Below, piece by piece: positions 1-56,273 of a DNA stretch of 64,000 bases (positions within the stretch are counted from its first letter, which is position 1; every line of letters starts with the position of its first letter). The position numbers were made by a program, and so were the translations under genes. The DNA is from Selaginella moellendorffii. Its lineage: Eukaryota > Plantae > Lycopodiophyta. The notes under the pieces are model-generated. The model saw only the letters and a list, made by a program, of their open reading frames with translations, ran no database searches and had not been told where the DNA came from. The stretch spans positions 575,614 to 639,613 of the forward strand of contig NW_003314334.1 in NCBI RefSeq assembly GCF_000143415.4, written 5' to 3'.

Positions 1-2500
1 CATGTTCAAAATCTCTAGAAACTTTTGTAGAAAATCAGCTTGCCCTTGACCTAAATACAATTGTTTCGTCCAATTTGAGCAAATTTATCAAAATTCTATT
101 GGCTATATATGTCATAAATGTGATTGTAGGTATTGAAAGTTACTTGCCAACAAGTCCTTTTAGATATTCTTTTATTATTGCTATAACAACAAGAGATTGG
201 TATTATTAAACACTTTATCAATTTTTATTGTGCTAATGGAGTTAACTATTAGACAAACATAAGGATAGAATTTCTAAATATTATTAATTAAGCATACTTA
301 GATTAGTTAGGAGTTCCTGTCTTATTGTGTTTTGCATTGTTTAGTGACAAAAACCCTTGTGTATTGAGATTAATCTCTCAATATCACTATATGATAGCTT
401 ACCATTTCCATCTTGCTGTCATGCTCTATATGTTAATCTTATTTGGTCCTATTGATTATTTATAGAAAGTGTCTAAATCTGCTAGTAAGGCATATCTATA
501 TAATGTAGAGATTGTCTACATTTATATATGCTCTCACATTTAGATTTAAAATCTAACATCATTCCATATTTAATAAGCTTTCATGATTGTCCTAAAGTCT
601 AATTCCTAGACCCAAAGTGTGCATTTATATGAGTAAATGGGTTTTAAATGTATAGTAGAGATAGTGGGTAGGTTTAGTATAGCTAACCAATCTAAAACAT
701 TGTCTACCTCCTTGTTAAGTGTATTTATTTTTGTTTTATATCCAATTTGGGTTTAAACCCACAATCTATACCATGCTAGCTAGTAGAGTACCTATATCCT
801 CACGTATATTAAATAACATTAAACTTTATTTGGCTCCATTTTATATGTTGGTTTTAACATTGGGATGTTAGATATTCTAAAACTATTCTAATGTCAATTT
901 GTGTTTTTGTTCCTTAGTTGTATACTCAAAAGTTGCTCTGCACTCTAGTTTTTTTGTTCTTTAGTTACATGCTCGAGAGCTTGGCTCTATCCCTTCGTTT
1001 AGTGGCCTAAGGCACTAAAGCTCAAGTCTTGCTCCATTGCCCTTGGCACATGTACTTAAGGGTTAAGTTCCACTTTGTGGTTATTTTATTGAAAACCACA
1101 TATACTACAATATGCTTTTATGAACCATATTATATTATTTAGCTATCATTTCTCTCAATTTTATCAAGCTAAAGAGAAGAAAAATTTTGTATAGCCCCTT
1201 TTATTCAAAAAAGAGAAAAGGTGAAAAAATGCTAGCTTCTTTCATTCTCCACTACCATTTTAACCATAATGAACTTTATTTTGTTTATAATAGAGCAAGG
1301 GTCAAATGCACAATTCAACACCCCCTTTTATTAAGGGTGGCCTCTTTACTTATTTGGAGTTGCATTCCTTGTAAATCAACTTAATGACTTAGGATATGTT
1401 TTAGTATATTACTTTCAATTATTTAGTATTTAAAAGTATAAAATATGTACTTTTTATTCTATTTATATAGCTTAATATGACTAAGATAATACTAAAGAGA
1501 ATGAATAAAAGAAAAAATATAAAACACAATAAATAAAAACCTTAGATTATATATTTATAAATTACAACCATGCATCATTGTTGCAAATATGATTGCAAGT
1601 ATCTACCAATGAGTCCTTTCAAATATTCTTTCTTTACTGCTATGATGGTAGGAGGTTAATATTACTAGACCCTTTTTCAATCTCTACTTAAGTTAGTTGA
1701 GAAATTGGTCTTTGTGTGTGCACTTGGTTAGATAAGTATAGAGATGGAATTCTTAAATGCTATTAGTCAAACAAACTTGACATAATTAAAGAAATTCATT
1801 TATTGGTTTGCACTTGTTAATGTTGGGAACCCTTGCAATATTAAATTTAGTCCCTCAATACTTACTAAGTGATAATTTATTATGTCTACCAAGACACTCT
1901 CACTATCATGCTTCATATGTGTTTGTTTCATTTGGTCCTAATGGCTATTTATGAAAAGTGTCTAAATCTGTTAATTTAGTATATTTACAAAATGTAGGGA
2001 TTGTTCTGAACACGATAGTATTATTCTCGTGTCCAAATTCACAATCTAACATCATTTTATATTTAGTAGCCCTTGTCATTTTGCTCCTTGGGTTATATAT
2101 TCAAGAATCATTCTGTGTTTTACTTCTTTCACTTTTATACTCTATGATTAGGAGTTTAACTCTATCCTTTCGTTCAGTGGCTCAAGGTCTTGAAACTTAA
2201 GTTCTCCACTATCCTTAAACACATGACAGCATATGAAAGGTTAAAGTTCCATTTCATAATTATAACATCATAAGGTAAAAAGTGAAAACCATATATGCTA
2301 CAATCCTAAAGTTAGTTGTTAAGCATTTCACTTATGCTAAGTATAATTGAGCATGATGCAAAGCACTAAGCCATGGAAGGAGCAAGGAGTGGCAAGGGGG
2401 TAACCACTTAAGAGAGAGGAGTGTTGGATTGTGCATTTGTTCCCTTAGTTACATTTAAACCATTGAAGAGTAAGAGAGAGAAGAAAGAACAAAATTATTA
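1..2500. mobile_element. Nested, degenerate LTR-retrotransposon remnants
   Basis: AT-rich, CpG-depleted, no credible ORFs. Diverged direct repeats at ~340-560 vs ~1820-2060 and ~985-1110 vs ~2160-2305. Two PPT + LTR-start junctions of one family lie in opposite orientation: minus strand AAAAGGGGG-TGTTGAATTGTGCATTTG from 1320, plus strand AGAGAGAGGAG-TGTTGGATTGTGCATTTG from 2422. Confidence 0.65.
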
Positions 2501-31449: not shown

Positions 31450-34300
31450 AATGGCAAAATTTAATATATTGATCAATAAGCATTGTGACTCAAAACTTAT
31501 TAAACCTACAATCTTATATTATCCCATGAAAAAAAAGGGATGTCATCAAAGGAAACAATATAATTTAAAAACTTAACCAAACCTTTATGAAAATAATATT
31601 TTTCCAACATTACAAAAAATTCATGGTGTTGAAAGTGTTTGGAGAAAGTGAACATAATGGTTGTGCTTTTTTGAATTTTAAAGAAGATAAAATTGTTATC
31701 AAAATAAATGATAATAAATAAATCAAGAAACTACTTTAAACATCATTTGCTATATATAACAGGGGTGTATCTCCGTGTACTCAAAATAACAATAATAAAT
31801 ATGAAAATTCTTTTCCATTCATCACCCTCCCAATATGAGTGAAGTATAATCACCATAAATTATCTTAGTAAAAAATTAGACTTTAGGCTTTAATATCTCA
31901 AAGATTAATATAAGTGGGTATTAATTAGGAATGGTGACTTTGTTTAGGTTGTAATAGTCAACTATGAAGAAGCCTATCCTTTTTGGATACAAAGAAGAAA
32001 GAAGATATGTGTACTAATTAAAGACTAAAAATGCCCAACCAAAACCTTTTGAAAATTTATTTTCAATATGTCTAGTGATTTCCCTTTCACAAGATCAAGG
32101 GAATAATCATAATGTCAATATATTGGCAAGATGTCAACTCTCTTTTTATTGAAAACATCCTCGAAGTAAACATATTTGGAGGGAGAGTTAGAACTCATAT
32201 AAAGAAATATGAGAAATTTAGATTGGAATAAAAAAAAAATTGGAAAAAAGAGAGAATTATCCAATTAATATCATGCCACTTCCAAACATTATTAACTTCA
32301 CCACATCAAACCAAGGAAAACTAAAAATAATGAATACCTTTGGGATGAAAATAACATCAAAGGAGATGCAATCTTAAATATTGTTACTTCTACCAACTCT
32401 ATAATGAATTTGAAAGAGATTTATTGACTGTCCACCACATCAGCATATTTATTTTTGCCATTATTGTTGATGATAGGATTTGAACCTCAAACCTCTGCTT
32501 ATGAAATTTAAACTCAAGACATATCATGCACATCCACATATAAAAACATATAAAAGCATAGTTTTTTACTCTAATTACCTTGATATTAATTTTGAACAAC
32601 CCTATAAAAGCATGATCTTTTACTTAAAGTGTTATTTGAACACTTTGATATTCATGGCTTCCCTAGATCTTCTTCTTCAGCTCCAATGAAATCTTGATGT
32701 TCTATAGAAGTCATATTAAATGTTAGAGCAATCCAACACAAATCTTTATTTAAAGCTCTAATGGATTGTTCCAACTCCTTTTCTAACTATTTCATATGTG
32801 GTGGATAATTAATTGATACTTGTACTATAGTCAAACAATGAATTCCCTAGTTAAAACTAAGTCATATACTCCCTTTTTTTTTCCACTCTAAAGCAATCCT
32901 TACTCTTGATCCACTAAAACCATGATCATATGTAAACAAATCAAAAGCAAACTTTACTTCTAATGAGTAAACTTTACTCCTTAGTTTAGGCTAGAGTGAT
33001 CTTGAAGTTATCCATTCAAATACTACTAGACTTTTATTAGTTTTTATAATTTCTATTTTGGTTTAATATTTGATTATTTTATTTGACACCATATATAACA
33101 TTCTCAATTTTTTAAGGATTGAAGTTTGCTTTATCAAAGTGAGTGAATACATAATACAAGATGAAAATGGCAATTTCTTGGTAGGAAAACCCTTTAAGGC
33201 TATTTTTATTTTTATTTATCCTTAAAATTTTAAAGATCTATGGTGATAGTATATTTAATTTTAATTTTATAATATTACATTAATAAAAAAATTATCCTTT
33301 TTTCCAAGTCTTTTTTTTGTTTATTCAATCTAAATTTTCATATCTCTTTGATTGAGTTCCGAGGTTTTAATGCACCTGAATTTAAAGTTAAATTCCAAGC
33401 CTATTACACTACAAATAAAGGTTTAGTATACACTCAAAATCCTTTATAAACATTAATTCCTTATATCTATTTTTTTTTTAAATACTGTCAGATGGTGTTT
33501 AATACAATTTTGGCATAACATGAAGAGGTGGTTACCGAATAGCATGGAATTTAATTTGAATATTTATATAAACTAATGTTTTATAGTCATGCTTCTAACC
33601 ACTATCCTTACTATACATTTGGAATCCTTATGTTATTTTTCACTCTCAAAACTACATTTATACAAAGATTAATTATGATATTTCTAATAAGAAACTCTCT
33701 GCAATTATGGATTCTGTTAATATTTAATGTCATTTTCTTGAAAGTCCTCCCCACTTGCTGTTTACAATGATTATAATAAATTTCAATATTTCTTTTTAGC
33801 ACACATCCTCAAGTAGTTTTAAACTCAGTTATAACACTATCTTATTTATTTTGGATTTCCTCCACTAACATTGGATTAAATATATTATTTATATTAATTT
33901 AATAATAATTTATTGCATGTTGCATGAAGCAACACTTTGTTTGTAGTATCATCTTTATTTATTAATCCAATTGTTTAAATGGAAGTTTATAATTCTAAAC
34001 ATGTTTATAATTTACAAACATAAAATTAATCTTATTACACACACCATTAGAATAGAAAACATTATACTAAAAAGTGAATTTTATAAATTATAAACATATT
34101 TATATATAAATGCAAGATTAATCTAAATAAATAACAACCATTAGATGGTTGAATATCTTAGAATATCAAATATTCTAAGTATATTCACTATCCCATGGAT
34201 CCTTTTTTTAGGAGGCCAATTATTAAATTAGAAGCCCACCTATAGCTTCACCTAAAAAATTAAAACATTTATGATAATTTCATTTAAATTTTTAAAGATT
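31450..34300. mobile_element. AT-rich, CpG-depleted decayed repeat/transposon block
   Basis: Abrupt compositional shift, near absence of CG, no credible ORFs. Family not identifiable by eye. Confidence 0.45.
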
Positions 34301-34840: not shown

Positions 34841-35072
34841 GTTTAACATATCTCTCATTCTTTGTAGTGCAGTTTATTTTAGAGATTCCAGAATTGCAAA
34901 ACCGTGAGCTTCAGAAACCAGGTTCGCTTATACATGGTCTCGCCCCCCTTCAAGAAATATAACAAGGATTTAAGTATGCTGTACCGATATGAGAGATGTC
35001 TGGTCACCTCCCCTTCAAGGGCGGGCTGTGTTTAGGTGGTTTTGAGCATGGGGAAAAAATTGACAATCAAGG

Positions 35073-35145
35073 CGACCTCACTGGGGATTGAACCCAGAAT
35101 CTCTGGTTCCGTAGACCAGCGCCTTATCTGTTCGGCCATGAGATC
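35073..35145 (-). tRNA. trnR-ACG: tRNA-Arg(ACG), possibly decaying
   Basis: GATCTCATGGCCGAACAGATAAGGCGCTGGTCTACGGAACCAGAGATTCTGGGTTCAATCCCCAGTGAGGTCG forms a cloverleaf with anticodon ACG. A T6 Pol III terminator follows at 35059-35054. Confidence 0.88.
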
Positions 35146-40200: not shown

Positions 40201-40891
40201 CTAGGTAGGGCTAATATTCCGTAGAGGTGAGTAAATACGCGAGGGGAGGGAGGGCCCAGGGGTAAAATACATTTATTTTGAATCAAAGCGGCTCCCTGGA
40301 ACGTCTATATATACTTGCAAAGGGGAACACGAGGGGTGTTAAGGACACTTTTTGCCCCAACCCTAAGGCCGTTCACACTGCCTGCGTTAAAGTGTGTCCT
40401 TGGCTCAACGCCACATTTTTTTTCTTCTGGTTGGTGTTCCAACGATCGAACTGCGGTGCTTGCTTTGCTCGCATCGTGTTTTTTCCTTTTTTTTCCTTGC
40501 TTAGAGCCAAGGCGCTAGGGTTCTTGCGGCGCGCCCGGGGGCTGGGCTGGATCGAGCAGCGGTGGGGGCGGAATCGCGGGCGGGGGAAGCCATGGTGGTG
40601 ATCTGCGGCGGTGTGTGGGCGCCATTGCGCAGGGCGACGGAGAGCGCGCGCGAAGAATCGCCCGCATCGGCGCGGGCGTGAAGAAATCAGATTGGGGCGT
40701 GGCGCCGGATCTCTCACTCGTTGCCGCGCATCTGGATCGGCGATTATCGCACTATTATATTGCTAGTGCCAGGTTGTGCTTGGCGAAAGGAGGATGCGCC
40801 TGGGCATTGGCATTGGGATTTTCTAATCCTCCTCCAGCGGCTTATAGGTCATGGCGGCTGAATCGCTTCCTCGGCTCCTAGACTAGCAACG

Positions 40892-43716
40892 ATGAAGGGT
40901 AAAATCCATCTCTCTCTCTCTCTCTCTTCCTCATCTCTATGTTCTCACTCTCATCCTTGTTTTTGTGGTTTTCCAGTCGCAAACTCTCACCAACACGTCA
41001 GCTCCTACGAGGATGGCTTGTATCGATCGCACTCCATCACCGATGTCCTCAACTTTTTCAAGTGGCGATCGCGGACGAGGGCGGTGGCTCCCGAGAAGCT
41101 GTCATCGGGGAGCCTAGTTGCGGATGATGAGGGATCGCCGGATGGAGAGCCCAAGAAGGCAGCAGACGAGCATCCATCAATGTCAGAGAGCGATGGAGGG
41201 GAGTTTGATCATCCGAGCCTCCGATTCGCCACCACGAATGGCGAGCGAACACTTTCCAATGGCGACTTTTATGCTGGCTCCTGGCAAGGGAATCTCCCCG
41301 AAGGGACAGGCAAGTACTTATGGTCGGATGGCTGCATGTACGAGGGGGAGTGGGGGAATGGGATCAAGACTGGGCGGGGAAGGATCTCCTGGCCATCGGG
41401 TGCTACTTACGAAGGCGAGCTCCTGTGTGGAAATCTCCATGGCCGTGGGGTTTACACCGGAGTGGACGACACCACTTACAAAGGCTCCTGGAGGATGAAC
41501 TTGAAGCACGGCGAAGGTGTCAAGAGCTATGCCAACGGAGATGTCTACGAGGGGTTCTGGAAGGCTGGCTTGCAGCACGGCGATGGGAGATACATTTGGC
41601 AGAATGGAAACCAGTATGTGGGGGAGTGGAGGAAGGGAGTGATGAACGGGAAAGGAGTTTTGAGATGGAGCAACGGTGACACGTACAACGGGCAGTGGCT
41701 GGATGGGCTCGAGCACGGCCATGGTGTTTACACTTGGACAGACGGTGCGTGCTATATGGGAACTTGGAGGAAAGGTGTCAAGGACGGGACGGGGATCTTC
41801 TACCCGACTGGATACTTTCCGCCGAGATCACGGCGGTCTTTTGAGGCGCCAGCTGCGAGCGAGCTTTCGGGCTCGGACTGTCCGGCGTCTCCGATGGAGA
41901 GGCGATGGAGTCTCGAGGGTGGTTTGGATTTGACACACTCGAAAGAGTCGTCGCAAAAGAAGTCAGCTATCGACACGCCTGTGCTTGAAAGGGAGTACGT
42001 GCAAGGGGTGCTGATCAATGAGATAGTCAAGCAAGGAGATGCCGCGTCACTTAAAGTTTCCAAGCGTCGGCAACGTCGGCCGGCCAAGCGGCCTGGGGAG
42101 ACTGTTATAAAGGGTCACGGGAGTTACGATTTGATGCTAAACTTGCAACTAGGAATAAGGTGAGTTTTTCCTTTTTGGCTTTCTTTTATATCGTTTTCAT
42201 AGTAACGTTGTTGAATTGAAACAGGACTAATGTAGGTAAAATGACGCTTGACACTGCTCCAGACGTCTGCCCGCAGGATTTTGGGCCACGATCGGTTTTT
42301 GTATTGAAGTTCCCGAGGCTAGGCTCGCATCTAACACCTCCGCATCAGTCACTCGACTTTAAATGGAGAGACTACTGCCCCAACGTTTTCAGGTGTGACG
42401 ATAAACACGAGCGTTTCCGTCTGATCATTTTCGTATGCCTGGCAGGTCTCTACGTAAAATGTTTAGAATTGACTCCGCTGACTACATGATGTCACTGTGC
42501 GGCAATGATGCACTGAGAGAGATTTCTTCCCCAGGAAAGAGCGGAAGTGTCTTTTACCTCTCACAGGATGACAAGTTTATGATCAAAACCATGCGGAAGG
42601 CTGAAGTAAAGGTTTGTTTCTTTTGTATTTTTCTATTCCGAGTGCGGGTCTAAGATGGTATGTTTTTGCAGGTTCTCTTGGAAATGCTTCCGAGTTATTA
42701 TGAGCACGTTCAATCGTCCTCTAACACTCTAATCACGAAATTTTTTGGTCTTCATCAGGTTGAACCTCAAGGTGGAAGGAAGGCAAGTTTTTCTAAATCT
42801 ATATGTGCTTTTACGCGAGTCTCATCTTGTGTATCATCTTGCAGGTTCGTTTTGTAGTGATGGGCAACGTGTTCTGCACTGACCTTCACATCCATCGGAG
42901 ATTCGACTTGAAAGGCTCTTCTCAAGGCCGATCCACTGACAAAGTTGAGATCGACGAGAATACAACTCTAAAGGACTTGGACTTGAACTTTGTGTTCCAT
43001 CTCGAGGCATCCTGGCGGCAGTGTCTACTCAAGTAAGAGCACATTAACAGCAACGTTTGATAATCAGACTTTGTTGCTTGCAGGCAAATAGAGCAGGACT
43101 GCAAGTTCTTGGAATCACAAAGGATAATGGATTACAGCTTGCTGCTGGGAGTCCATTTTCGCGCTCCTCAGTGCCCTGCCGTCTTCTCTCCAGTTCCTTC
43201 ACTACCTCCAGACGCGGCTGCCGAATGTACAGGTAAGTTTTTGAGATTGATTTGTCCACGAGGACAACCTTATTAAACATTATTCTTATAGACGGCCTGG
43301 ACTCAAGCAAGCGAAGTGGAACTCTAGCAACAACGGAAGATCTATGCTCGCTCCCAAAGACTACAAGGTATAGACATATAGACATCCTCTATCCTGGAAT
43401 TTCGAGCTTACGAGTGTTGTGTTTTCTTTCTCGCAGGCTTCAAATACGACTTGGTGTGAATATGCCCGCCAGAGCCGATCGTTCTCACTGTGATGATGGA
43501 ACTAGCAGTGATGTCTACGACGTGGTTTTGTACTTGGGGATCATTGACATCCTCCAGCAGTATGATATCACCAAGAGAGTGGAGCACGCGTACAAATCAC
43601 TCCAGTTTGATTCTCAGTCCATCTCTGCGGTGGATCCGAGGCTCTACTCGAATCGATTCCAGGAGCTTGTGCGGAGAATTTTCCCCAGCAACGATACCAG
43701 TGTCGTCCCCAAGTGA
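40892..43716 (+). CDS. PIP5K: Phosphatidylinositol-4-phosphate 5-kinase with MORN repeats (type B), multi-exon
   Basis: MORN repeats (YxGxW..G..HGxG), [62 protein letters not shown] and [13 protein letters not shown] donor at 42784. Confidence 0.96.
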
Positions 43717-44318
43717 AAAGAGAACCAAATTGGCTGGCGGGGGGGGGAGGAAGAAGAAGCCGTCGTGTACAGTAAGTAGATTAGTGTTTAGCTAACCAGC
43801 TGGTTTTGGCTGCCATTTTGTTCTTCCAAGTGACATTAGGAGACTAGTCGAGCTATGTACAATTGGGATGAGAGAAAGAAACCAAGTTTTGGAGATGGAA
43901 TGTCTTTAATGCTTTTACTAAGTCGTATTAGCTGACTTGATGATCTTTGTCGAAGACTTTGACTAAGACTTTGACAACTCGGCTCGTGCCCGCTGAAGGA
44001 AAAGATTATTTAGTGCGGAGTTCTTTGTAAGTTTTGAACTGCCGATCTTCAGCCAAAGTGTATCACTTTTCCCATCGATTTGATAGTGATTCGATTCCTG
44101 GGAAAATCAAGTGATTCGTGGTCCGCAAACCTTGATTTGAAGGTTGGATGATTGCACTGACTTGGAGCAAACAGGAGCTTGGCCACCATTGAGCGGACAG
44201 AAAGCTAAGAGTTTTGTTGACACAAGCAACATGAAATTGTCTTTCTGGATTTGATCTCTGGATCCATAGCGAGCACGCAGCTGGGCACTTTCAAACTCGT
44301 CAGCATCTCTCGAGCCAG

Positions 44319-44430
44319 ATCCTTCCTAAAAGGCGCCAAGAGCAAAGACTTTTAAAGTAATATCATCAAATCCTTCCTAAAAGGTGCCGGAACAGCCTAA
44401 GAGCAAAGACTTTTAAAGTAATATCATCAA
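44319..44430 (+). repeat. Tandem ~55-bp duplication
   Basis: ATCCTTCCTAAAAGG...AAGAGCAAAGACTTTTAAAGTAATATCATCAA occurs twice in tandem. Confidence 0.9.
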
Positions 44431-44754
44431 CTATAAGCCCACCCGAAGGAACGAGATCTTTTGCTGAGGTATTTCCTTCCAGAACTTCTGATTTCCCGGA
44501 ACTTGTGCAGATTCGTTCCACACACAAGTGGACCCAACCGCGAGAAAATTTACTTCGAGAGGCAATCCAGTGCCGTCACAAACAAGGACTGAAGAGGTAG
44601 CTAGTGAAGAGGATGTTGTAGACACTACAATTTTGCGAGAAAATGTGCAAGAGATGTCAAGAAGAAGAAGATATCGTAATGCCGCCATCCGTGGCCAGGA
44701 TACGCTGCAGATATTGGTCAGGGCAGCAGTCGTAACTCGGTTGAAGACGAAGGT

Positions 44755-45974
44755 TCAACCTGTAGGCATCACATTGAAAAATGAGTAGACAAGATTGGGA
44801 ATACATAGCTGCCTTACCAGAGCTGTCACCGCCGCTGTCCCCGTTCGAATCCGAGCTGCCACAATTTTCCTCACCCAGCTCATGGCCGAGCCACATGACA
44901 AAGACGAACTCCTTGAGCCCTTCATTCTTGATGTGCATCTTGCAGAAGTTGCCGTCTCGATTGCCCATCTTCACCATTCGACCCTCCCATGCAACCATCT
45001 CGGAGTCGTTCGCGCCAATCTGTATGAGCATTGGCTGGAACCATTCGTTGTTCATGACGCCACAAGGCATGACAAGCTTGGGCAGTCGTCGGACGCGCCT
45101 CGCTCGCGCAACACGGTCGATAAGCTGGGCTTTCCCTTCCTGAAAAGATCACGGTTTACAAGCTGTTACAGCAATTGCTTTTCACCTTGAATTTCTTGGG
45201 CGCCTTGTACTCCACGAATGCCCGTCCATCGTCGTAGACGTTGCTGTCCTCATGTCGACAGTACGCAAGATCAACCCTGTGAAGGCCCGCTGTTGTCTTG
45301 TTCACCCAGATGTGCTTTTGAGGGGCAGAATATAAACCATCCAGCAGTGGAAGTATTTTCTCCATGAGCTGCTTCCCATAGTCGTGGGAAGTGAATGGAT
45401 ATACTTCTTTGAAGCATATCTCCGCACGAAATCCATTGCACCTGTCCTTGATGGCCTTCTTGTTTTCCCCCCAAAAGCGGTTGAATCCATTTTTCGCGAT
45501 CTGAATGTTGAGCGTTTCTTTAAAGCTCTTGAGCTCAGACCACAGATTCCGACACTCGTGCAAGTGACCCGCCCAACTCTTCATCAACTCTGACGTCGAC
45601 AAGAGCCTAGTTCCCACAAAGTTGGTTGAGTCCTCTGCCAGTTCCTCTGCCTCCGCCCGGGGAACGATCACAACCCTGAAAAAATGATGCGGCACAGACA
45701 TGTCAAGTGGAATTGCCGCAGTTTCATGCCACACTCTCGTCCAGTTGCGGCTTCCGTCGCCTGAGGAAAACACCAGCTGCCAGCCAGCGGGGATGACATC
45801 ATCTTCATCACTGGACAGTCTCGCCTTGATGGAATCCGCCACCTGACCAAGACTGACCTGAGAGTACACATGAAAGCTGTCATTGTCGATGTGAGCAGCC
45901 ACCAGAGACGGGTCCGGATCGTAGCGCTGCTGCGGGTCCCCGACCGCCCAGAAGTAGTGAATGCAAGTGTCCAT
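44755..45974 (-). CDS. Header domain + PD-(D/E)xK restriction-endonuclease-fold protein (Crinkler/CR-like), ~371 aa
   Basis: Exons 45974-45186, 45139-44818 and 44759-44755 are phase-consistent GT-AG. Motif HRVDLAY...RAFVEYKAPKKFK|EGKAQLI fits D...ExK...QL. The last exon is uncertain; unspliced, the stop would be at 44657. Confidence 0.7.
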
Positions 45975-45986
45975 TTAGGGTTCTGC

Positions 45987-47838
45987 ATGGCAAACGTGGT
46001 ATATTGTAAAATTGGCATGGTGCCTTTGCTGCCAAGCCCCGAGGCGGTGCTATCGCAGGAGGAAGTGGGCGAGCTTGTCATCCAGCCAGGCGTCCGCTTG
46101 GCGGATGTGGTGGAGCAGATCAGAGAAAGGGCACAGATACCCCCAGGTAGCTCATTTTCGTTTTTCGAAAGTGGGGATGGTTTCTGGCGGAGGGTTTTTG
46201 CTCCAGAGCGGGAGATTTGCATTGCTCCAGATGTGAAATACTACTTCTGTGTTCGTTTGAGACCCGACAAGAGGAGCCGCAACGAGCAAATAGAAGGAAA
46301 GCGGTGTTGCTTTGGAGCTCTTCATGAGAATGTGTCGAGGGTGATGGCCGCGCTCGGGCTGTTCCAGATACGTGCCGGCGCCTTTGAGGAGTTTGAAAGG
46401 AAGGATAGCACGCAGGATCTGGCTCATCAGATGCTGAAGGGTTTGGGGCTGCTGAGCTGCGACGATTTTGCTGCTCGCTTCAATCTGAGTTTGTTCCTGG
46501 ACGAGAAGTCTTTCCGGTAAGCTTAAGTTTTATCTCAGCACAAACTTCTCTCACGATCGTTTGCAATATGTATCCAGGGAGAAAATCCAGGAAGACAATG
46601 TTCTTCATGTTGCTCTTGTCTTTGTCGACAAAATACAGCGTTCTTTCCGTTCAATGGTGGCCAAGCCTCCGGATCTCGTTTGCTCCAAGTCGATGCAATC
46701 ATCCAACCGTCAAAAGAAGGTTTGTGGACCTTAACGCGTTGTCTAGTATCACTTGACTTCTTGATCTTTTCAGGAACTGGCATTCTTGTATTGGCTAAGC
46801 TGTCTAGTGGCGCTATACAACAGCGTTTGTTTCCCCAGCGTTCCAACGACGCTCGAGCTGATTGCTGGAAACAAAATGTCAGACACTCCGGACCTCAACG
46901 TACGAGTTGTCAGAAAACTTCGTACAGAATCACTATCAAACGCTGTCTTCAAGGTTGTGATCGATGGGAAAAGTGATCCACTTTGGCTGAAGATCGGTCA
47001 TTCTCGGAAGGCTCTCAAGACCGTTCACAACTTATGCCTTCCACCTATGCTGTGGAACCAAGTGAGTGCTGTAGAATGTTCATGCCTTATTACTGTGGTT
47101 TCTATTTTTGTATTTTTTTCTCGTTCCAGGTGAAAAACGAGGGCAGGATCTTGAAAAGATTGAAGTCGAGTGGCTGTTCATTGATACCAAACTTGGTATT
47201 CTATGGTCACTGGCATGGCAGGCCTGCTGTTGTCACACGGAACGAAGGAATTCCTTTCCTTGAGCAGTTTCCGTGCGACGCTGATGTTGGAACTGTGGAG
47301 AAGCTTTGCAAAGATCTAACAGAGGCGGTCCTGGTTTTACACGTAAGATGTAAAACTTCTGATCTCGTATATTTTTTCTCAACACTTTTTCCAGGACCAC
47401 AAGGTCTTACACTGCGACATCAATCCAAGAAACGTGGGAGTGTACAACGTAAAGACGGATCGATGGTTTTACCTTTACGACTTTGGGTGTGCGCTGGATC
47501 TGCGACGAGACGAGGATGCGTCCGAGGTGGTGGGGAACTTGCTCTTCAGCTCCTGCCGCAACCTGAACAGGCTGCAGCCGAATCTGGTGACCGAGCTCGT
47601 CTCAGTTGTCTACACCTGCTTGTATGTTGCGGGTTTGAAGCTGCCGTGGGAAGAAGCAGCAGCCAAGGGAGACTTGGACGAGTGCTGTCTCTTACGTGAT
47701 ACCTTTTTCCGGGAAGTTGACCTGTCTATGTTTTCTCAAAATATAGCAGGCTGGCTTCGCTTTGTTTTGCAGCAGCGAACTGATGCTCGTCCAAGGGATA
47801 TTGCTGCGAAGTATAGAGAGTATCTATGTGGTGAATAA
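45987..47838 (+). CDS. Header domain + degenerate nuclease-like segment + atypical protein kinase (CR-kinase/FunK1-like), 538 aa
   Basis: Exons 45987-46516, 46578-46719, 46774-47061, 47130-47342 and 47395-47838 splice in frame. Kinase motifs LWLK, VKNEGRIL, HCDINPRN, YDFG, GNLLFSS and LKLPW. Confidence 0.8.
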
Positions 47839-48354
47839 TATGTATTATTGCCAAGTGGTGGAGGCATTGCTGGATTTTAAGGCGAATCTCCATATATAAA
47901 AATTAAACATTATGGGTAGTAGCAGAGAAAGAATCTCCAGGCCAATCTCCAGTTCTTCATGTCTTGACAGCTCACATTAACAATTAACATTGTGAATTTA
48001 AACAACAAACCACTCTCCAATCGCGTGTGGAGCAGCAGCAAGCAGCTCGAGCACCAGAAAGAGCTCGCAATGAGCTTGCATGGAACAATGGTTAATCTGG
48101 ACCAGCGCCCTAAATTCAAAGACTATTGAGCACGTGAATTTCTGAGCATTTCCAGACGCGTTTGTAAGAAAGACAAAGAAAATAAAAATGCCACGGACTT
48201 TATAACATTCCCACACTAAAATTCGTCCACGAGAATTTTTATCGACCATCCATCGAATTCTATGTTCATGGCTGGAAATCCTGCCGCATTATTTCTTCCA
48301 GATGATACACCCCAATCTTTCAAGTAACTTACCACGCTGTGTTGTTCTTCACGC

Positions 48355-48858
48355 TTACCAGGGATACTTTGGAGAGGCCGGGGGAGAGGCCTTCATCTTG
48401 TTCTTCGGCTTCTTCTTCTCCCAGCTCGCGTATCCGCACAGCCCAAACTCGCACTGGCTGTGCTTGGAGCAAATATTGTCGCAGCTCCCACAGTGCTTTC
48501 GATCGCGGAGTAGATCCACGCACTTCCCCGCACAGCAGCTAAAGCCATACGTGCAAGGCTTGTTACACCCTCCACAGTTGCTGGGATCCACTTTAGTGTC
48601 GACACAGAACCTGTTCCAGCAGCACTTCGTCCCACCCGATGGAAACTTTGCCGGATCCTTGCAGACGCTGGCATTGTGAGCGCACCAAGTGAACTGCCAC
48701 TGCTGGCTCCCGGAGAGATAGTTGCTTCTCAAGAAGTTGGAGTGGCCGGGCTTTGGAGAGTCCCTCTCAGAGCCATCCTCATCCTCGTTCGCGGCTGCTA
48801 AGGCTGTGTTGTAGAAGATGAAAGCGAGTACCACCGACGTGCAGATTGAGTTTCTCAT
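48355..48858 (-). CDS. STIG1-family secreted Cys-rich protein
   Basis: Signal peptide plus CCWNRFCVDTKVDPSNCGGCNKPC...CCAGKCVDLLRDRKHCGSCDNIC...CEFGLCGYA (Stig1 domain). Confidence 0.92.
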   Translation of the reverse strand: MRNSICTSVVLAFIFYNTALAAANEDEDGSERDSPKPGHSNFLRSNYLSGSQQWQFTWCAHNASVCKDPAKFPSGGTKCCWNRFCVDTKVDPSNCGGCNKPCTYGFSCCAGKCVDLLRDRKHCGSCDNICSKHSQCEFGLCGYASWEKKKPKNKMKASPPASPKYPW

Positions 48859-49849: not shown

Positions 49850-52800
49850 ACTTATGTCTATATTCCATTAGAGCCTATCACTGCTTAGACTTTAAAAATG
49901 ATCTTCAACTTGCCATATAACTAATTTGAGTTTATAATATTTGTTCATTTTGTAAGTTTTTAAATTTAAACTTAAGTGTAATATTATTAGGACATATACC
50001 CTTAATTAATTGGAAAAGGGGTGTATTCTTATTCATGGGCTCTTTTTTTTATATTTAAACCTCTATAGAATCACTTAACCCAGTATTACTCAAACCCAAA
50101 AATGCTTAATTTTAAAATCCCAATACCTTACTCGATTGGAAAATAGAGTACACTTTTATTCATAGGCTCTTTTCTTCTATATTTAAATTTTTATAAATTA
50201 TCTTTGAGTAAATAACCATAATTTTTTGTAAGTTCATGCCCTTATAACTCTCCTAAGAGCCTTGCTCTCTTTATACTTTTCGGATTGAGGCAAAGCAAAC
50301 GGAACTACCAAATGTCAATTTTATGTGTTGTGATTCCCCTAGCCAATCAAGATATCAAATGTAAGCTTTTAAATTTGGACTTTCTAGGAGGTCACTCATT
50401 ATTCAAACCCAAAAATGTTTAATATTAAATATCCCAAGACCTTTAACCAATTGGAGAATACTCTTATTTATTGAATTTTTTTTTTATATTTGAATCTTTA
50501 TGAATTGTTTCTTAAGTCGTTATCTTTAGTTACTTACATGATTTATATAAAGCTAAGAAATTTCTTCTTGTTGCAATATTATTTTACAACTTGAATATGA
50601 TTTATATCCAAATCAATAATATTAATATCTTGATGGCAAAGTTATAGTTGGAGATGTTAGCAACGACTATTAAGGATGTAAAGAAGAAAAAAAGAAGAGC
50701 TTTACCAAAGGTTTGCTCATACAAAATAGCTATTTTCATGGATCACACTTAATATATTTTTATAGTGCTAGGATATTTAAAAGATGTGTAGATCTACATC
50801 TAGCTTTCTATGCTGCATAATTGCATATAAACTTCATAAGCAAAATACTAGATTTAGAAAAGCAATCTTTGTAAAGACAAAAGCTGCACTATTTTGGAAA
50901 TTAATACTAACTTGAAAGAGGTTGTTAGATAAGTTTGGAGTTGGTTTTACAACTACTTAGTGATTAATATGTGATTTTGTGAAATTATTGATGAGAAGCT
51001 GTAGAAGCTATATATCGAATAGCTATCAGAAGATAGGCTACAATCACTTGCTTCTAAGTTTGAAATATTATGAAGGATTTTGCATATAATTGGAGTTACT
51101 AATTGTGGCCATATACCAATTATTGCTCCAAATGAACCACAACAATACTACAATTTGTGAGAAATAAATCCCTAAGCCCCAAAGTGGAGCCAAAAGTGTG
51201 CCATGTGGTAGTGGTCGAAGCGGAAGTTCAATGAGTATAACACATTTGGACAAAAAGTTCCAACTTGAAAAGTTGAGAGTGTGAGTGGAACTCCAAATGA
51301 AGTGCTCGAAGAATGAACATAAAGCGATTGATGAATGAGTCTATAAAAAGGGAAATAAGAAGGACTAATACATACAAATGTTATGACCAAGTCTAAGATA
51401 AAATCTGAGATGGGGTTTAAAGTGAAGCCTGAGGTCAAATCTAAGATGGAGACTAAAACTGGGTTCAAGATTGAGGCCAAAACCAAGACTGAATTCGAGT
51501 CCAAATACTAATATAGGTCAAAGCATGAAAGCCCAAAGCAATCGTCCCCCCCGGGGTGGGGGGGGGGGGTGTCCAAGGCTGCGGGGGGTTTTAAAAGTAT
51601 AGTATGGAGAGTGTGGGGGTTAAACTCTAGTAGAACTATTTTGGCTAGGAAAAGTTAATATTACCCAAGAAGGTTACACTCATATAGTGTATAATGATAT
51701 GACTATTGAGGAGTTCAAGGCTAAAGTGAATATAGACAGATTAATGGGGTAGCTTGGTGAAATGTTCAAGAGTCAATTCTAAATCCCTTGGGAAATTGAA
51801 TAGTTAATGCTCCTAATCCAAGTGTGGGTAGCACTACCTACTTGAATACTTGATATGGCTTAACAAAACCTCACTCTAGACACATGGCTAGGCACCTAAG
51901 GGCAAAAGGTGGGGAAAGTACCTATAAGGCTTATATAACGCTGGTATTTCGAATTGTTATCCTAAAGTTTCGGATTGTGGAAAGAAAAAGGAGTAATTTT
52001 TTTGTGTAATGACCAAGGACATGGTCATATGGTGAAGAAGTCCCAGATGTCAATAGGATTTAGTTGCCAAGTCTTTGAACTCTAACCCAATAACAGTATT
52101 GGTGAGTACGACTGTGGATGAAGAGGGATTTAGTAGGGACCGAAGTAGAGATATTGAAGAAGGGTGCTCTCTATATTTTTAGGCGTCTTAAGGATGCTAA
52201 ATTATGGTTATGGGATGACTATTCATGGACAGATGGCCCAGTTTTTGAGAAATAAGATTATGTTACAAGTGATCTTGAACTACTAATGAAACAAAGGTAA
52301 ATGAACATAACCTTAGCATAACGAGTTAATATGTTAATGGTACATTTGGGGTGTCTGTAATGGATTAGACATATGGAACACTTAGACCAAATGCAAAGGT
52401 AAAGTGGTATAAAAAACATTTATGGGGCTAGCAATTCCCTAAGTTAGGAATAAGGTTTATGAAGATTGTGAGTGAGACTCTTCCAAGTACTCACAAGTGT
52501 GGTTAAGTGACTAAAATAAAATAGAAAAATTAATCACTTACACAATTGAAAAAGTTTTTACTTTACTAAATGATTGTCTTAGCAAAGTGTATGATTTAGG
52601 ATTATAACTTTGGCTAGATATGAAGTCTTCATGATTGGACTATTGTAAAATACAAATCCTTAAACCCTAATGTGGAGCTGAAAATGTGTCATGTAGTAGT
52701 GGCCAAAGTAAAAGTTTAACAAATATAACACATTTGGATCAATACCAATGACTTGAAAAGTCGAGAGTAGAAATGGAACTCCCAAAGAAGTGCTCAAGGA

Positions 52801-54600
52801 ACAAGCATGAACAATTGATAAATGAGTCTTTAGAAAGGGATATAAGAAGGACTAACACATGGCAAGTGTCATGACACATACGTGAAAGTGTCAAAACCTC
52901 ACTTTAGCCATATAATTAAGGCACCATAAAGGCAGAAGGTGGGGAAAGTACCTACAAAGTTTATATTAAGCTGCAATGTTTTAAAATATCATCCCAAAAT
53001 CCCACACCATGGAAAAAAGAAAAGTGGTCCTTTTGTTTGGTGAGCAAGGGTATAATTATGTGGTGAGGATGGTGGGAATTACAAAATGGCCTTCAGGCTC
53101 TTGGCCAATGGTGGTGTTGGCAAGCAGTACCATAAACGAAGAGGGATATATATTGGGGGATAATGTTCCTCATGTTTTAGGGCATCTTAAGGATGTTAAA
53201 ATGTGGACTACTCATGGATAGATAGTCTAGTTTTGGAGAGATAAAACTGTTATGTGAGTGGTTTTGGACTATCAATAAAATAAGTGTGAATAAGTATGGC
53301 CTTATCATAATAGATTAATATATTGGAGGTACCTTTGGGTATCTATAGTGGGATTGGACATGTGGAACACTTGGGCTAACTTTAAGAGCAACTATAAAGG
53401 TTAGCAAGTCCCTTAAGTTGGATAAGGATGAAAGTTGTGAGTGATACTCCTTCAAGTGGTCAAAGACATCGTTAAATGACTAAAATAAAATGAAAAATTT
53501 AGTCATCTATAACCATTTTCTAGAGAATTCCAAGTGGTCATATCTTAGAAGGTATGCTTTAGTTGGCAATGTAGGTATAAGGATGGCAACTGAAAGAGAA
53601 TTTGGGATGTTGAAGGCTTATTTTAGGATTTTACTAAAAATAAATGACTCAATAATAAAGAATGTGAAGGATCAAATGTTTAATCCTCCACTACCTTTAT
53701 AAATTAGATCCTAATTCAGTTGATCAGGAATTAATAGAAAAAAATCATTTTAAAATAATAAATTTCACCATCAATCAAAGCTATGAAGTCACTAAGAGTT
53801 ATAAAAACTGCGAAAGCAGCTACTTATGATTCTCTAGGATTTGAGCAATAAATTAAGTAGTGGGGGGTGAATTGCAATGAGCCTTAGAAGGGTTTGATCA
53901 GTTCAAAAACATTAGTTAGCAACAAAAGCTAAGGTAAATGCCAAATGATGCAATGCATTAGCCTTAAGTCTCTTTATAAACAAATAGATTTAGAAGTGAG
54001 AGTTAGATTTCCTAAAAATCATTATGATATAGAGAGTGAAATGGATGTTAACTAAAAAGTTGAAGCTAATATAGAAAAAACTTCTTCTAAAGTACTATCC
54101 TCTTACTTGATCTTCTTCTTTTTTTGTGCTTTCTCCTCATCTTTGGATTAAAATTTGGGTTTTTTAAGTTGTAACAACTTGAGCATATGACTTTTCTAAC
54201 TTATGGTTTGTCACTAAAATGCTCATCAACCATACAACTTGAAAACAAACCATAAAATTTAAACTAAAATTGGTGAAAAAAATGTCACAATATCAGGTTA
54301 AAAAAGTCACCATTTGAAAAACAGTTAAGAAGTTTCAAGAATTCAAAACACTTACAACTTAAGCTAAAATACCCAGTTGAAAAAAAATACTATACTTATT
54401 ATTCCCAGATTTCTCTATTATCTTCCTTGTAATCTTTTAGATCAATTCTAATTTTTGCAAACACCATCAACACAAATTGAAGATATGAAGCTATAAATCA
54501 ATCCCTTGTTTGGGAGGCTTCTTGAAATCCACCTCTATCTCAACTCAAAGAGAAATCAAGTTAATCATTTAGTGATCTTTTCACTTTATACACTTGGTTT
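49850..54600. mobile_element. Degenerate LTR-retrotransposon remnants with internal duplications
   Basis: AT-rich and CpG-depleted. Duplicated segments ~51170-51390 vs ~52660-52870 and ~51865-52530 vs ~52895-53505. Zinc-knuckle-like remnant near 52000, poly-G tract 51552-51570, GGGGGGTGAAT LTR-border-like motif at ~53862. Confidence 0.55.
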
Positions 54601-54749
54601 TATCTAAATGCCTAGTACTTGAGATATTGACTGGTTACTGCCATTTACTCTTTCTTCACTAGTAAGTTCCCATGTGTATTATACCAAGTATTGAAATTAA
54701 GAAAAAAAAATTAATTATTAAATAATTTTTTTATCCTAATAAATTATTT

Positions 54750-55205
54750 GAAATGAGTTCTAGATATGTGTAAGCTTGTTTCCTCAAATTAATTCATTTT
54801 ATAATCAGTCAGATGTTTGTGAATATAAATATAACCTTTTAGATTTTTTGAGTCAAAGTAATACAAGGTACAAAGAATTTTCTCTTAGCAGCAATATAAT
54901 TGTAGCTATTGTTATTCAATAATATTAACCAAGGATTCTAATTAAATCCTTATAATTATGGAGGATTTATTTAATTAGATAACAGCATTACACACTATAA
55001 TATCTATGTTATAAGTTATTATATCCTAAGTTGCTGTGATTTAATAATAAGCTAGTACAAGGAGGCCTCAAAGATATTATCCTAGCATTGGCAAAGGGCA
55101 TCCTGGTAGTGGCTGCTGGAGTCAAAATGAGATCCTGCCTTCTCCTCTTGTCTGGGTTTGCCAAGTTGTACTACACATTTCTCATATGTAAATAAAATAT
55201 TTTTT
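54750..55205 (+). pseudogene. Decayed paralog of the 55784-56273 secreted-protein-like gene
   Basis: Collinear matches (GATGTTTGTGAAT, AGAATTTTCT, CAATATAATTGTA, CCAAGGATTCTA, CCTTATAAT..GGAGGATTT) with stops and indels. Confidence 0.6.
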
Positions 55206-55783
55206 AAATATAAAAATGTTTCACTAATTTAACACTTTTTAAATTTTATATATATATATATCCTTTCTAGATTTAATACATAAGAGCTTTGATCCCATGT
55301 TCGTCCTCTAGAGTAAACACAGGAGGAAAATGGCAAACTCACTTCATAGTGGATCTAAACAGAGAATTAGGTTTGGTAGACTCAAGAAAAGGACCATGAT
55401 GACTAGAGGATGATCATAAACAATTATACTTTAGTGAGGGGAAGATTGTTATGCACTAGGTTAGGATAATAAGACAAACATACTTAGTTATCAAATGCAG
55501 TTTCCTAGTTGCTTCACATCCAGAATATTCTAATATGTTTGTTTCGTTTTTGCTACTTTATGAATAGTTATAGGATCTAGATAAGTATTAAATCCTAGAT
55601 ATATCATCCCACCAAGTGGAAACCATTAAAAGTAGATATATGTACACTATTATTGCTGCTTGATGACAGAAACATATTTTAATCCTCCGGTCTATATATA
55701 AAAAGTTGATGAATGACTGAATAAATTATGTACTACTGGTCAGTGTACATATTCTTATTTTCAAAATAGGCAAATTCTGTAAA

Positions 55784-56273
55784 ATGATAATTAAATTTTT
55801 CCTAATAGTAGTTTTGTTATTTGGTTAATAAGATATCTGGGATGAGCACTACATATATAAAAGCTTGTATTCCTCTAGTTAATCCATTCTATAACCAGCA
55901 AGATGTTTGTGAATTTAAATATGACATTGTAGAATTTGTGAAGGAGAATAATACAGGCTATACAGAATTTTCTTACACCAACAATATAATTGTAACTGTT
56001 GTTGTTACATCATATTATCCAAGGATTCTAGATGATATAGTTGAAGCTTATAATATCATATTGGATGAGTGTGTAACACCTTATAATCATGGAGGATTTG
56101 TTCAATTCGATAATGGACAATTACATATAGCAATATCTAGTACAGGACCTTCTCATACTGATTTGTTATTAAACTATAACAATAAAAAGTATTATAACTT
56201 ACTACATAGTTTATATAATGTATGGACGAGATGTTCTACACATTTTTCATTTGTAAATAAAAATATCTGTTAA
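55784..56273 (+). pseudogene. AT-rich small Cys-containing secreted-protein-like gene with a frameshift after the signal peptide
   Basis: TATATATAAAA at ~55693. ATG 55784 gives MIIKFFLIVVLL, one base out of frame with the 150-codon ORF 55821-56273. Confidence 0.45.

What the first reader, a model, noticed from the sequence alone, without database searches (positions are those of the whole stretch)
44755..47838. Head-to-head Crinkler/CR-effector-like gene pair: header-nuclease opposite header-pseudonuclease-kinase
Seen: two divergently oriented, intact, spliced genes. Their N-termini are related: minus VSLGQVADSIKARL...IPAGWQLVFSSGDGSRNWTRV...HHFFRVVI vs plus VRLADVVEQIRERAQIPPGSSFSFFESGDGFWRRV...KYYFCVRL. 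The minus gene carries a D...ExK...QL motif (RVDLAY...FVEYK...GKAQL). The plus gene ends in a non-RD kinase (HCDINPRN, DFG). Established: a ubiquitin-like header followed by restriction-endonuclease-fold and/or kinase domains is the architecture of Crinkler/CR-type effectors, and head-to-head layout is typical of co-regulated sensor/executor NLR pairs. Inference: this is a two-component conflict module (toxin plus antidote or regulator, immune executor plus sensor, or a selfish driver) in which the partners may dock through their homologous domains.
Basis: partly seen in the sequence, partly recalled or inferred. Interest (0 to 1): 0.92.

Follow-up and report, generated by a model that had tools for sequence, protein, structure and literature searches.

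The report
Selaginella orphan nuclease-like/kinase gene pair
Two back-to-back genes known only from the spikemoss Selaginella moellendorffii probably share a small ubiquitin-like front end; one ends in a very divergent protein kinase and the other in a possible nuclease, a layout that recalls Crinkler-type effectors, but no sequence relative exists to prove kinship.

Summary
The window is Selaginella moellendorffii scaffold GL377638.1. The two divergent genes are real. Both are spliced with short GT-AG introns, use native codons, and are intact and in the same order on the second assembled haplotype. They are deposited as hypothetical proteins SELMODRAFT_427340 (minus gene) and 427339 (plus gene).

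Confirmed:
- The kinase catalytic core (HCD..N, DFG) is present. Pfam Pkinase scores E=3.4e-7, just under the curated cut-off.
- The D-x19-ExK...Q pattern is present in the minus gene.

Probably true:
- The N-termini are homologous: shuffle z=6.2-7.5 and hhalign P=0.004, but composition-adjusted BLASTP E=0.22.
- They fold as a beta-grasp. The AlphaFold2 model has pLDDT 66, and nearly all top Foldseek hits are ubiquitin-like, but none is significant.

Not supported:
- No nuclease fold could be shown. There is no profile hit and the structure model failed.
- There is no evidence for a 'pseudonuclease' in the kinase gene.
- No homologue exists anywhere for the minus gene (1.84 billion representatives scanned with its exon 1), so linked pairs do not recur.

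Between haplotypes the minus gene is constrained (pN/pS 0.27) yet unusually diverged at silent sites. The plus gene shows no constraint (2 silent, 15 replacement changes).

Verdict: a lineage-restricted pair with Crinkler/CR-like architecture split over two genes. The conflict-module reading is untested inference.

The parts
44755..45974 (-). Minus gene (allele of SELMODRAFT_427340). Exon 1 is 45186-45974 (263 codons). A 46-nt intron spans 45140-45185. Exon 2 starts at 45139. The 3' end is uncertain among three models. With a 58-nt intron (44760-44817) the stop is at 44755-44757 and the protein has 371 aa. Read-through to 44657 gives 423 aa. The database model runs to 43963 and gives 503 aa.
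   Evidence: The same exon 1/exon 2 junction is used in the deposited allele P0001. Codon-usage log-ratio is +0.20 to +0.27 in frame. pN/pS is 0.27.
45645..45974 (-). Minus-gene N-terminal 'header' domain (about aa 1-110), a predicted beta-grasp.
   Evidence: AlphaFold2 on alignment A1 gave pLDDT 66 and pTM 0.57, with strand-strand-helix-strand-strand-strand order. At least 45 of the top 50 Foldseek PDB hits are ubiquitin-like domains, but the best E is 0.09.
44876..45389 (-). Minus-gene C-terminal region carrying D...ExK...Q, a putative PD-(D/E)xK nuclease-like domain. It contains the 46-nt intron. The bounds are approximate.
   Evidence: There is no profile or PDB hit. The whole-protein model is unusable at pLDDT 34.
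45975..45986 (.). Spacer of 12 nt between the two start codons (42 nt if the plus gene starts at 46017). It holds a telo-box-like AACCCTAA on the minus strand, abutting the minus ATG.
   Evidence: The octamer occurs 9 times in the window against 1.9 expected.
45987..47838 (+). Plus gene (allele of SELMODRAFT_427339). Exon 1 is 45987 or 46017 to 46516. Then there is either one 322-nt intron, or introns of 61 and 54 nt around an exon at 46578-46719 with the next exon starting at 46774. The other exons are 46839-47061, 47130-47342 and 47395-47838. The database model starts at 46344 and so omits the header.
   Evidence: Exon arithmetic reproduces the 419 aa of P0003. Codon log-ratio is positive in frame for every exon.
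45987..46301 (+). Plus-gene N-terminal 'header', related to the minus header.
   Evidence: It is stop-free on both haplotypes. The in-frame codon log-ratio is +0.11, against -0.11 and -0.19 in the other frames.
46839..47835 (+). Divergent protein-kinase-like domain (exons 2-4). The catalytic loop HCDINPRN and the DFG motif are in exon 4.
   Evidence: Pfam Pkinase E=3.4e-7, 30.4 bits, profile positions 99-169 only. PDB kinases match at E 5e-4 to 4e-3. The N-lobe exons alone give no kinase hit.
44042..44323 (-). Truncated partial copy of plus-gene DNA 46414-46997. It lies downstream of the minus gene on the minus strand, is cut short at both ends and has two internal deletions.
   Evidence: Inverted repeats I1-I4 at 77-97% nt identity; blastn and tblastn. 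It is also present on the other haplotype, where the tail of the deposited P0001 model is read from it.

Best explanation
This is a lineage-restricted pair of real Selaginella nuclear genes.

Origin (likely). An old local inverted duplication placed copies of one small N-terminal beta-grasp (ubiquitin-like) domain head to head. Each copy is now fused to a different C-terminal module.

The two modules. The plus gene carries a very divergent but catalytically equipped protein-kinase core (shown). The minus gene carries a helical linker plus a domain with a PD-(D/E)xK-like D...ExK...Q pattern (a putative nuclease, not shown).

Proposed mechanism (inferred, by analogy with CR/Crinkler C-termini in which a kinase accompanies a REase domain). 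The minus product is an intracellular nucleic-acid-cutting or nucleic-acid-binding executor. The plus product is its kinase partner or regulator. The shared beta-grasp domains bring both to the same partner or to each other. The near-abutting start codons force overlapping divergent transcription, which would couple their expression. Neither protein has a signal-peptide-like N-terminus, so action inside the plant's own cells is more likely than export. Defence against invasive nucleic acids or selfish behaviour are both possible.
For: - Genes are real and native. The scaffold was identified and the neighbours are ordinary plant genes. The order STIG1 / kinase / partner / PIP5K is the same on the second haplotype. 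No stops occur in either allele. Codon usage is native and the introns are short GT-AG introns.
- The minus gene is constrained: 21 silent and 21 replacement changes, pN/pS 0.27, p=4e-5.
- Header homology: z=6.2-7.5 with 0 of 2000 shuffles; hhalign P=0.0039. The match is collinear from the N-termini and mirror-symmetric about position 45975 or so.
- Beta-grasp fold: pLDDT 66 with the right order of elements, and the top Foldseek hits are almost all ubiquitin-like.
- Kinase.
- CR architecture of a Ubl header plus REase and/or kinase, with the kinase thought to regulate the REase, and CR proteins present in land plants: PMC5289972 and PMC12957317.
Against: - No profile or structure match supports a nuclease fold. 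The motif is common by chance.
- No Pfam family of any kind matched either header at E up to 10. There is no LxLFLAK-type motif.
- Header homology fails composition-adjusted BLASTP (E=0.22). The Foldseek hits are individually insignificant (best E 0.09, TM no higher than 0.46).
- The plus gene shows no purifying selection: 2 silent against 15 replacement changes, with omega of 0.3 or less rejected at p=0.001.
- The deposited plus-gene model omits the header.
- Start codons 12-42 nt apart leave no room for ordinary promoters.
- The locus is single. There is no family and no recurrence.
- No expression data were available.
Confidence: 0.4

Rival explanations
1. The pair consists of ordinary lineage-specific cellular proteins with no conflict role. 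One is a beta-grasp-plus-kinase signalling protein, comparable in layout to kinases with PB1, RA or RBD-type ubiquitin-like adaptor domains. The other is a paralogue whose C-terminal domain is not a nuclease. The head-to-head layout is simply the scar of a local inverted duplication.
For: The Foldseek neighbours of the header include RA, RBD, DIX and other adaptor-type beta-grasp domains. No nuclease family is detected. The kinase retains its catalytic residues. The neighbouring genes are ordinary housekeeping plant genes.
Against: No PB1, RA or DIX profile hit was found. Signalling components are rarely species-restricted orphans. The kinase gene lacks constraint between haplotypes, and the partner shows a local peak of allelic divergence. 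That pattern fits conflict or decay better than housekeeping signalling.
Confidence: 0.25
2. One or both genes are decaying or are not expressed as modelled. The plus gene would be a relaxed, pseudogenising kinase whose upstream 'header' ORF is a relic lying in promoter or 5' UTR DNA, as the deposited model implies. On this reading the pair has no joint function.
For: The plus gene has pN/pS 2.2, with 15 of 17 changes being replacements, and is not distinguishable from neutral (p=0.21). It has weaker codon bias than the minus gene or the neighbours. The deposited model starts at 46344. The Pkinase score is below the Pfam cut-off, and the glycine loop and APE motif are missing. A broken partial copy of the same gene nearby shows that the locus is being rearranged.
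Against: All exons are stop-free and in phase on both haplotypes, including 119 header codons upstream of the annotated start. The catalytic D, N and DFG are kept. The in-frame codon signal is positive in every exon. The minus gene is clearly constrained.
Confidence: 0.2
3. An ancestral single gene of CRN8-like order (header, REase, kinase) was duplicated in inverted orientation, and the copies degenerated in complementary ways. The minus copy lost its kinase, leaving the fragment at 44042-44323. The plus copy kept a dead nuclease between header and kinase.
For: The order on the minus strand is header, nuclease-like domain, kinase-gene fragment. REase coupled to kinase is a frequent CR C-terminal combination (PMC5289972).
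Against: The fragment is 77-97% identical in DNA to the plus gene, while the headers share only about 27-31% of residues. The fragment is therefore a much later copy, not a relic of the same event. The fragment's axis of symmetry is near 45420, whereas that of the headers is near 45975. The plus linker has no similarity to the minus nuclease-like region.
Confidence: 0.08
4. The pair is cargo of a mobile element or a recent horizontal acquisition.
For: There are no relatives in any plant or other organism. CR C-terminal modules are thought to derive from transposon-linked prokaryotic genes (PMC5289972).
Against: It is single-copy at a syntenic site on both haplotypes. There are no terminal inverted repeats at the edges of the 43717-48354 interval, only internal gene-fragment repeats. 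Codon usage, GC3 and intron size are native. No bacterial or phage family hit was found for the minus product.
Confidence: 0.05

Closest known systems
CR (Crinkler-RHS-type) effectors with REase + kinase C-termini, e.g. the CRN8 type (as summarised in PMC5289972 from Zhang et al. 2016)
   Same: A ubiquitin-like N-terminal header sits in front of enzymatic modules. A nuclease-type and a kinase-type module are used together. One header is combined with different C-termini. There is no classical signal peptide. CR-type proteins are reported from land plants.
   Different: Here the two modules are on two separate, divergently transcribed genes, each with its own header copy. No sequence or profile link to CR headers or CR REase families was found. 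There is no LxLFLAK-like motif. It is a single locus rather than an expanded, recombining family. The host is a non-pathogenic plant. The nuclease fold is unproven.
Kinases and adaptors with beta-grasp interaction domains (PB1, RA/RBD, DIX, Ubl)
   Same: A small beta-grasp domain is joined to a kinase. Such domains typically mediate pairing with a like domain or with a small partner protein. These folds are the nearest structural neighbours of the header model.
   Different: No profile match to any of these families was found. The partner gene carrying the same domain has a nuclease-like rather than a signalling module.
Head-to-head paired NLR immune receptor genes (sensor/executor)
   Same: The layout is divergent with a shared, very short upstream region. 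One member is constrained and the other is fast-changing.
   Different: No NB-ARC, TIR, CC or LRR domain is detectable. The resemblance is limited to gene layout.
Fungal FunK1 kinases (Pfam Pkinase_fungal)
   Same: The catalytic loop is atypical and non-RD, of the H-x-D-I-x-x-x-N kind.
   Different: The Pfam match is only E=0.21, 10.7 bits against a cut-off of 24.1. It is not a member.

Membership tests
CR (Crinkler-RHS-type) effectors | N-terminal header with ubiquitin-like (beta-grasp) fold | tested here: inconclusive
   The header model has pLDDT 66 and pTM 0.57 with beta-grasp element order. At least 45 of the top 50 PDB neighbours are Ubl or beta-grasp domains, but the best E is 0.09 and TM is no higher than 0.46. 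Only the minus header was modelled.
CR (Crinkler-RHS-type) effectors | Sequence-profile relation of the header to CR/SSK1-type Ubl headers, including the LxLFLAK-type strand motif | tested here: not met
   No Pfam family matched at E up to 10 for either header. Exhaustive phmmer of minus exon 1 found no relative. No LxLFLAK-like motif is seen in the translations. HHpred against the CR profiles of Zhang et al. was not available.
CR (Crinkler-RHS-type) effectors | C-terminal toxin module of a recognised CR class (REase, kinase, and others) | tested here: inconclusive
   A generic kinase core is present. The REase is seen only as a D...ExK...Q pattern. No comparison with CR-specific REase or kinase families was possible.
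CR (Crinkler-RHS-type) effectors | Multi-copy family with headers and C-termini reshuffled among paralogues | tested here: not met
   There is one locus per haplotype and no paralogues. Only the two neighbours share a header with different C-termini.
Eukaryotic protein kinase superfamily (Pfam PF00069) | Catalytic loop H-x-D-x4-N and DFG | tested here: met
   HCDINPRN and DFG align to the catalytic loops of Nek2 and IKK-beta.
Eukaryotic protein kinase superfamily (Pfam PF00069) | Score at or above Pfam's gathering threshold over the whole domain | tested here: not met
   The score is 30.4 bits against 31.7. Only profile positions 99-169 of 263 are matched. The N-lobe exons alone match no kinase.
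Eukaryotic protein kinase superfamily (Pfam PF00069) | Glycine-rich loop, beta-3 lysine, alpha-C glutamate, APE motif | tested here: inconclusive
   A candidate K (in LWLKIG) and a candidate E (in VKNEG) are placed by position only. No GxGxxG and no APE are visible in P0003.
PD-(D/E)xK (restriction-endonuclease-like) nucleases | D ... (D/E)-x-K catalytic pattern on adjacent strands, with a following helix | tested here: inconclusive
   The pattern D234, E255-x-K257 and then Q is present and identical in both alleles. In the low-confidence model the D lies at the end of a strand and the Q in a helix, but at pLDDT 34 this carries no weight.
PD-(D/E)xK (restriction-endonuclease-like) nucleases | Profile or structural similarity to any known member | tested here: not met
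   No hit was found in Pfam, NCBIfam, PADLOC, PHROGs or PDB sequences.
Paired NLR immune receptors | NB-ARC nucleotide-binding domain with LRR or other sensor domains | tested here: not met
   No such Pfam hit was found in either product.

The most novel reading that the evidence does not exclude
A plant-encoded, split Crinkler/CR-type module. A beta-grasp-headed nuclease and a beta-grasp-headed kinase are encoded head to head with overlapping 5' ends and act as a two-part executor/regulator system inside Selaginella cells. The nuclease gene would be held as old, balanced alleles and the kinase gene would be under diversifying selection. It would be an endogenous conflict or immune locus of a kind not described in plants.
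Probability: 0.12. Interest if true: 0.75.

Novelty: new variant of a known kind. Interest (0 to 1): 0.4.

Why it matters
If the architecture-level reading holds, it would show that the 'ubiquitin-like header plus nuclease/kinase' design exists in a lycophyte as two co-located genes sharing a header. That design is best known from pathogen Crinkler effectors. Such a locus would give a simple natural system for asking what the header does, and how kinase and nuclease modules cooperate, outside any infection setting. The contrasting allelic patterns could also mark a locus under balancing or diversifying selection in an early-diverging vascular plant. Those patterns are deep silent divergence with constraint in one gene and almost only replacement changes in the other. 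If the reading fails, the pair is still a clean example of orphan genes born by local inverted duplication and domain swapping. It also shows that the deposited gene models at this locus need revision.

Tried and rejected
- **Word-indexed protein search, minus exon 1.** Nothing was found in the 145-460 aa length range.
- **Exhaustive phmmer, minus exon 1.** It returned only the other-haplotype allele P0001 and a chance Asp-box-like repeat protein, P0002.
- **Search with P0001.** It found only itself, so there are no paralogues.
- **Family and PDB sequence scans.** Pfam (E up to 10), NCBIfam, PADLOC, PHROGs and PDB sequence searches gave nothing for the headers or the nuclease-like domain. The TALE-repeat and phage decoration-protein hits are noise.
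- **AlphaFold2 of P0001 without an alignment.** It gave pLDDT 34 and was unusable. I therefore ran no fold search on it.
- **'Pseudonuclease' test.** Local alignment with shuffles of every plus-gene linker piece against the minus C-terminal region gave no signal.
- **Mobile-element reading.** No terminal repeats are present.
- **Bacterial-type promoter/terminator scan.** It is irrelevant for a plant and gave nothing.
- **Zhang et al. 2016 and the Selaginella genome paper.** Neither is held in the library. I used reviews that summarise them.
- **Joined-exon proteins.** Exons were searched one by one by reference, and the deposited whole models P0001 and P0003 (other haplotype) stood in for the joined products.
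Full report
**Where the window comes from.** A 948-aa C2/PRT_C protein and a STIG1-like protein encoded in the window are found letter for letter in assembly GCA_000143415.2 (Selaginella moellendorffii). They lie on scaffold GL377638.1, with a second copy on GL377655.1. That assembly holds both haplotypes of one plant (PMC3680112). The finding lies between a MORN-PIP5K gene (40892-43716, +) and the STIG1-like gene (48355-48858, -). This is plant nuclear DNA, not a pathogen, virus or human sequence.

**Gene models, minus gene.**
- The gene starts at 45974. Exon 1 has 263 codons.
- A 46-nt GT-AG intron (45140-45185) follows. It splits the ExK from the Q-L.
- Exon 2 runs from 45139 and ends in a low-complexity Ser/Gly/Asp tail.
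- Read-through would give 423 aa. The deposited models (503 aa here, 469 aa for P0001 on the other haplotype) run on into junk.

**Gene models, plus gene.**
- The gene starts at 45987 or 46017.
- Its last three exons are 46839-47061, 47130-47342 and 47395-47838. They are confirmed by the deposited protein P0003.
- Between 46517 and 46838 two in-frame models exist. One has a single 322-nt intron. The deposited model has introns of 61 and 54 nt around an exon at 46578-46719.
- The arithmetic of the deposited model reproduces its 419 aa exactly.
- The deposited model starts at 46344, so it leaves out the N-terminal 'header'.
Exons were searched singly by reference, and the deposited alleles P0001 and P0003 served as whole proteins.

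**Are they genes?**
- Every exon has a positive codon-usage log-ratio in the proposed frame and negative values in the other two frames. This includes the plus header. The reference set was the neighbouring plant genes.
- On the second haplotype the same four genes lie in the same order, and both genes are free of stops there.
- Between haplotypes the minus gene has 21 silent and 21 replacement differences (pN/pS 0.27). The excess of silent changes has binomial p=4e-5, so it is a constrained coding gene.
- The plus gene has 2 silent and 15 replacement differences. That is compatible with neutrality (p=0.21) and incompatible with omega of 0.3 or less (p=0.001).
- The two genes differ from each other (Fisher p=0.008).

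**An unexplained allelic pattern.** Silent divergence in minus exon 1 is 0.105. The values are 0.01-0.02 in the PIP5K and STIG1-like neighbours and 1.2-2.7% in flanking non-coding DNA.

**The shared N-terminus.**
- Composition-adjusted BLASTP gives E=0.22.
- A plain Smith-Waterman score of 55 lies 6.2 to 7.5 standard deviations above 2000 shuffles, and none of them reaches it.
- hhalign of the two allele pairs gives P=0.0039 over 78 columns at 31% identity.
- The match is collinear, begins about 15-20 residues from each start codon, and is mirror-symmetric about position 45975 or so.
- I take homology as likely (roughly three in four) but not proven. Nothing else in the two proteins is similar.

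**Fold of the header.**
- AlphaFold2 on the three-row alignment A1 gave a moderate model (pLDDT 66, pTM 0.57). Its order of elements is strand, strand, helix, strand, strand, strand.
- Foldseek against the PDB found no significant match (best E 0.09, TM no higher than 0.46).
- At least 45 of the top 50 hits are ubiquitin-like or other beta-grasp domains. They include ATG8/GABARAP, RA and Ras-binding domains, USP Ubl domains, RAWUL, DIX, DWNN and TBCE. Classing these as beta-grasp rests on my own knowledge.
- This supports a beta-grasp header, with moderate confidence.

**The kinase.**
- P0003 matches Pfam Pkinase at E=3.4e-7 (30.4 bits, cut-off 31.7), over profile positions 99-169 only.
- It matches PDB kinases (IKK-beta, STK17A, a CDPK, HRI, Nek2, CK1) at E 5e-4 to 4e-3.
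- NCBIfam and PADLOC give only generic catalytic-loop matches.
- The catalytic D and N and the DFG are present. The glycine loop and APE are not visible.
- The N-lobe exons alone match nothing.
- The match to fungal FunK1 is E=0.21.
- So it is a real but extremely divergent kinase-like core that belongs to no named subfamily.

**The 'nuclease'.**
- D234, E255-x-K257 and a following Q are present in both alleles.
- No Pfam, NCBIfam, PADLOC, PHROGs or PDB sequence match exists.
- The single-sequence AlphaFold2 model of P0001 failed (pLDDT 34).
- The nuclease fold therefore remains a hypothesis based on a loose pattern.
- The 'pseudonuclease' proposed for the plus gene has no support.

**Relatives and recurrence.**
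- A scan of 1.84 billion representative proteins with minus exon 1 found only the other allele (95% identity) and one chance hit.
- Word-indexed searches found no paralogue of either gene within the lengths searched.
- No exhaustive search was possible for the plus gene. The absence of relatives is established for the minus gene (exon 1 exhaustively; whole model P0001 by word index) and is weaker for the kinase.

**A later rearrangement.** Downstream of the minus gene, on its strand, lies a truncated partial copy (44042-44323) of plus-gene DNA 46414-46997. It is 77-97% identical, cut short at both ends and has two internal deletions. It is far more similar to its source than the headers are to each other, and its symmetry axis (near 45420) differs from theirs. 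It is therefore a later event, not the relic of an ancestral header-nuclease-kinase gene. I left it as it stands.

**The junction.** The start codons are 12 nt apart (42 nt with the second ATG). The spacer reads AACCCTAA on the minus strand directly before the minus ATG. That octamer occurs 9 times in the window against 1.9 expected, and it resembles the plant telo-box promoter element (my knowledge). If both headers are translated, each transcript must begin inside the other gene. That would couple or oppose their expression. This is inference.

**Comparison with what is known.** Reviews of Zhang et al. 2016 describe CR/Crinkler proteins as a ubiquitin-like header followed by enzymatic modules. 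REase plus kinase makes up about one sixth of C-termini, and the kinase is thought to regulate the REase. [quoted passage not shown] The Selaginella pair works like a split version of that design. It cannot be filed as a member, for three reasons: the sequence-profile criterion for the header is not met, the REase is unproven, and there is no expanded family. The likeness to paired NLR genes is one of layout only.

**Verdict.** No paper in the library mentions either locus tag. Interest is moderate at 0.4. The best chance of something really new is the split CR-like module with contrasting allelic selection, at a probability of about 0.12.

Noticed in passing
window 44042-44323 (-): A truncated partial copy of the kinase gene's DNA (source 46414-46997, 77-97% identical) lies downstream of the minus gene. 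The deposited gene models on both haplotypes read into it, which is probably an annotation artefact.
   Followed up: yes
window 45186-45974 (-) compared with L004: Silent-site divergence between the two haplotypes is 0.105 in minus exon 1. Neighbouring genes show 0.01-0.02 and flanking non-coding DNA shows 1.2-2.7%. Possible causes are old balanced alleles, conversion from an unseen copy, or mutation bias.
   Followed up: partly
window 45975-45982 (-), and eight other sites such as 40359-40366: The telo-box-like octamer AACCCTAA fills most of the 12-nt spacer between the two start codons. It is enriched in the window (9 found, 1.9 expected). One copy lies about 530 nt upstream of the PIP5K start.
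   Followed up: partly
window 44316-44430: Two short direct-repeat families (32 nt twice at 61-nt spacing, and 22 nt twice at 51-nt spacing) lie beside the kinase-gene fragment. This suggests local slippage or duplication.
   Followed up: no
window 46517-46838 (+): There are two alternative in-frame splice models for the plus gene. One has a single 322-nt intron. The other has 61- and 54-nt introns around a 142-nt exon. The second adds about 70 residues, including a hydrophobic stretch, and fits the short intron sizes seen elsewhere in the pair.
   Followed up: partly
minus header about aa 70-80, plus header about aa 60-68: Both headers carry an S-x-D-G...W turn resembling an Asp-box. It drew the only non-self hit of the exhaustive search, the repeat protein P0002 at E=6.6e-4, which I judge to be chance.
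   Followed up: partly
P0001 aa 184-222 (window about 45320-45430, -): This stretch resembles one TAL-effector repeat (PDB E 0.007-0.03, with no stretch passing on its own). I judge it a chance similarity.
   Followed up: no
window 35071-35145 (-): A tRNA-Arg (ACG) gene lies in an AT-rich stretch.
   Followed up: no
window 1-2000, 32001-34000, 50001-56000: These blocks are AT-rich (GC 0.27-0.35), whereas genic DNA has GC 0.45-0.57. They are presumably repeat or intergenic DNA and were not examined.
   Followed up: no
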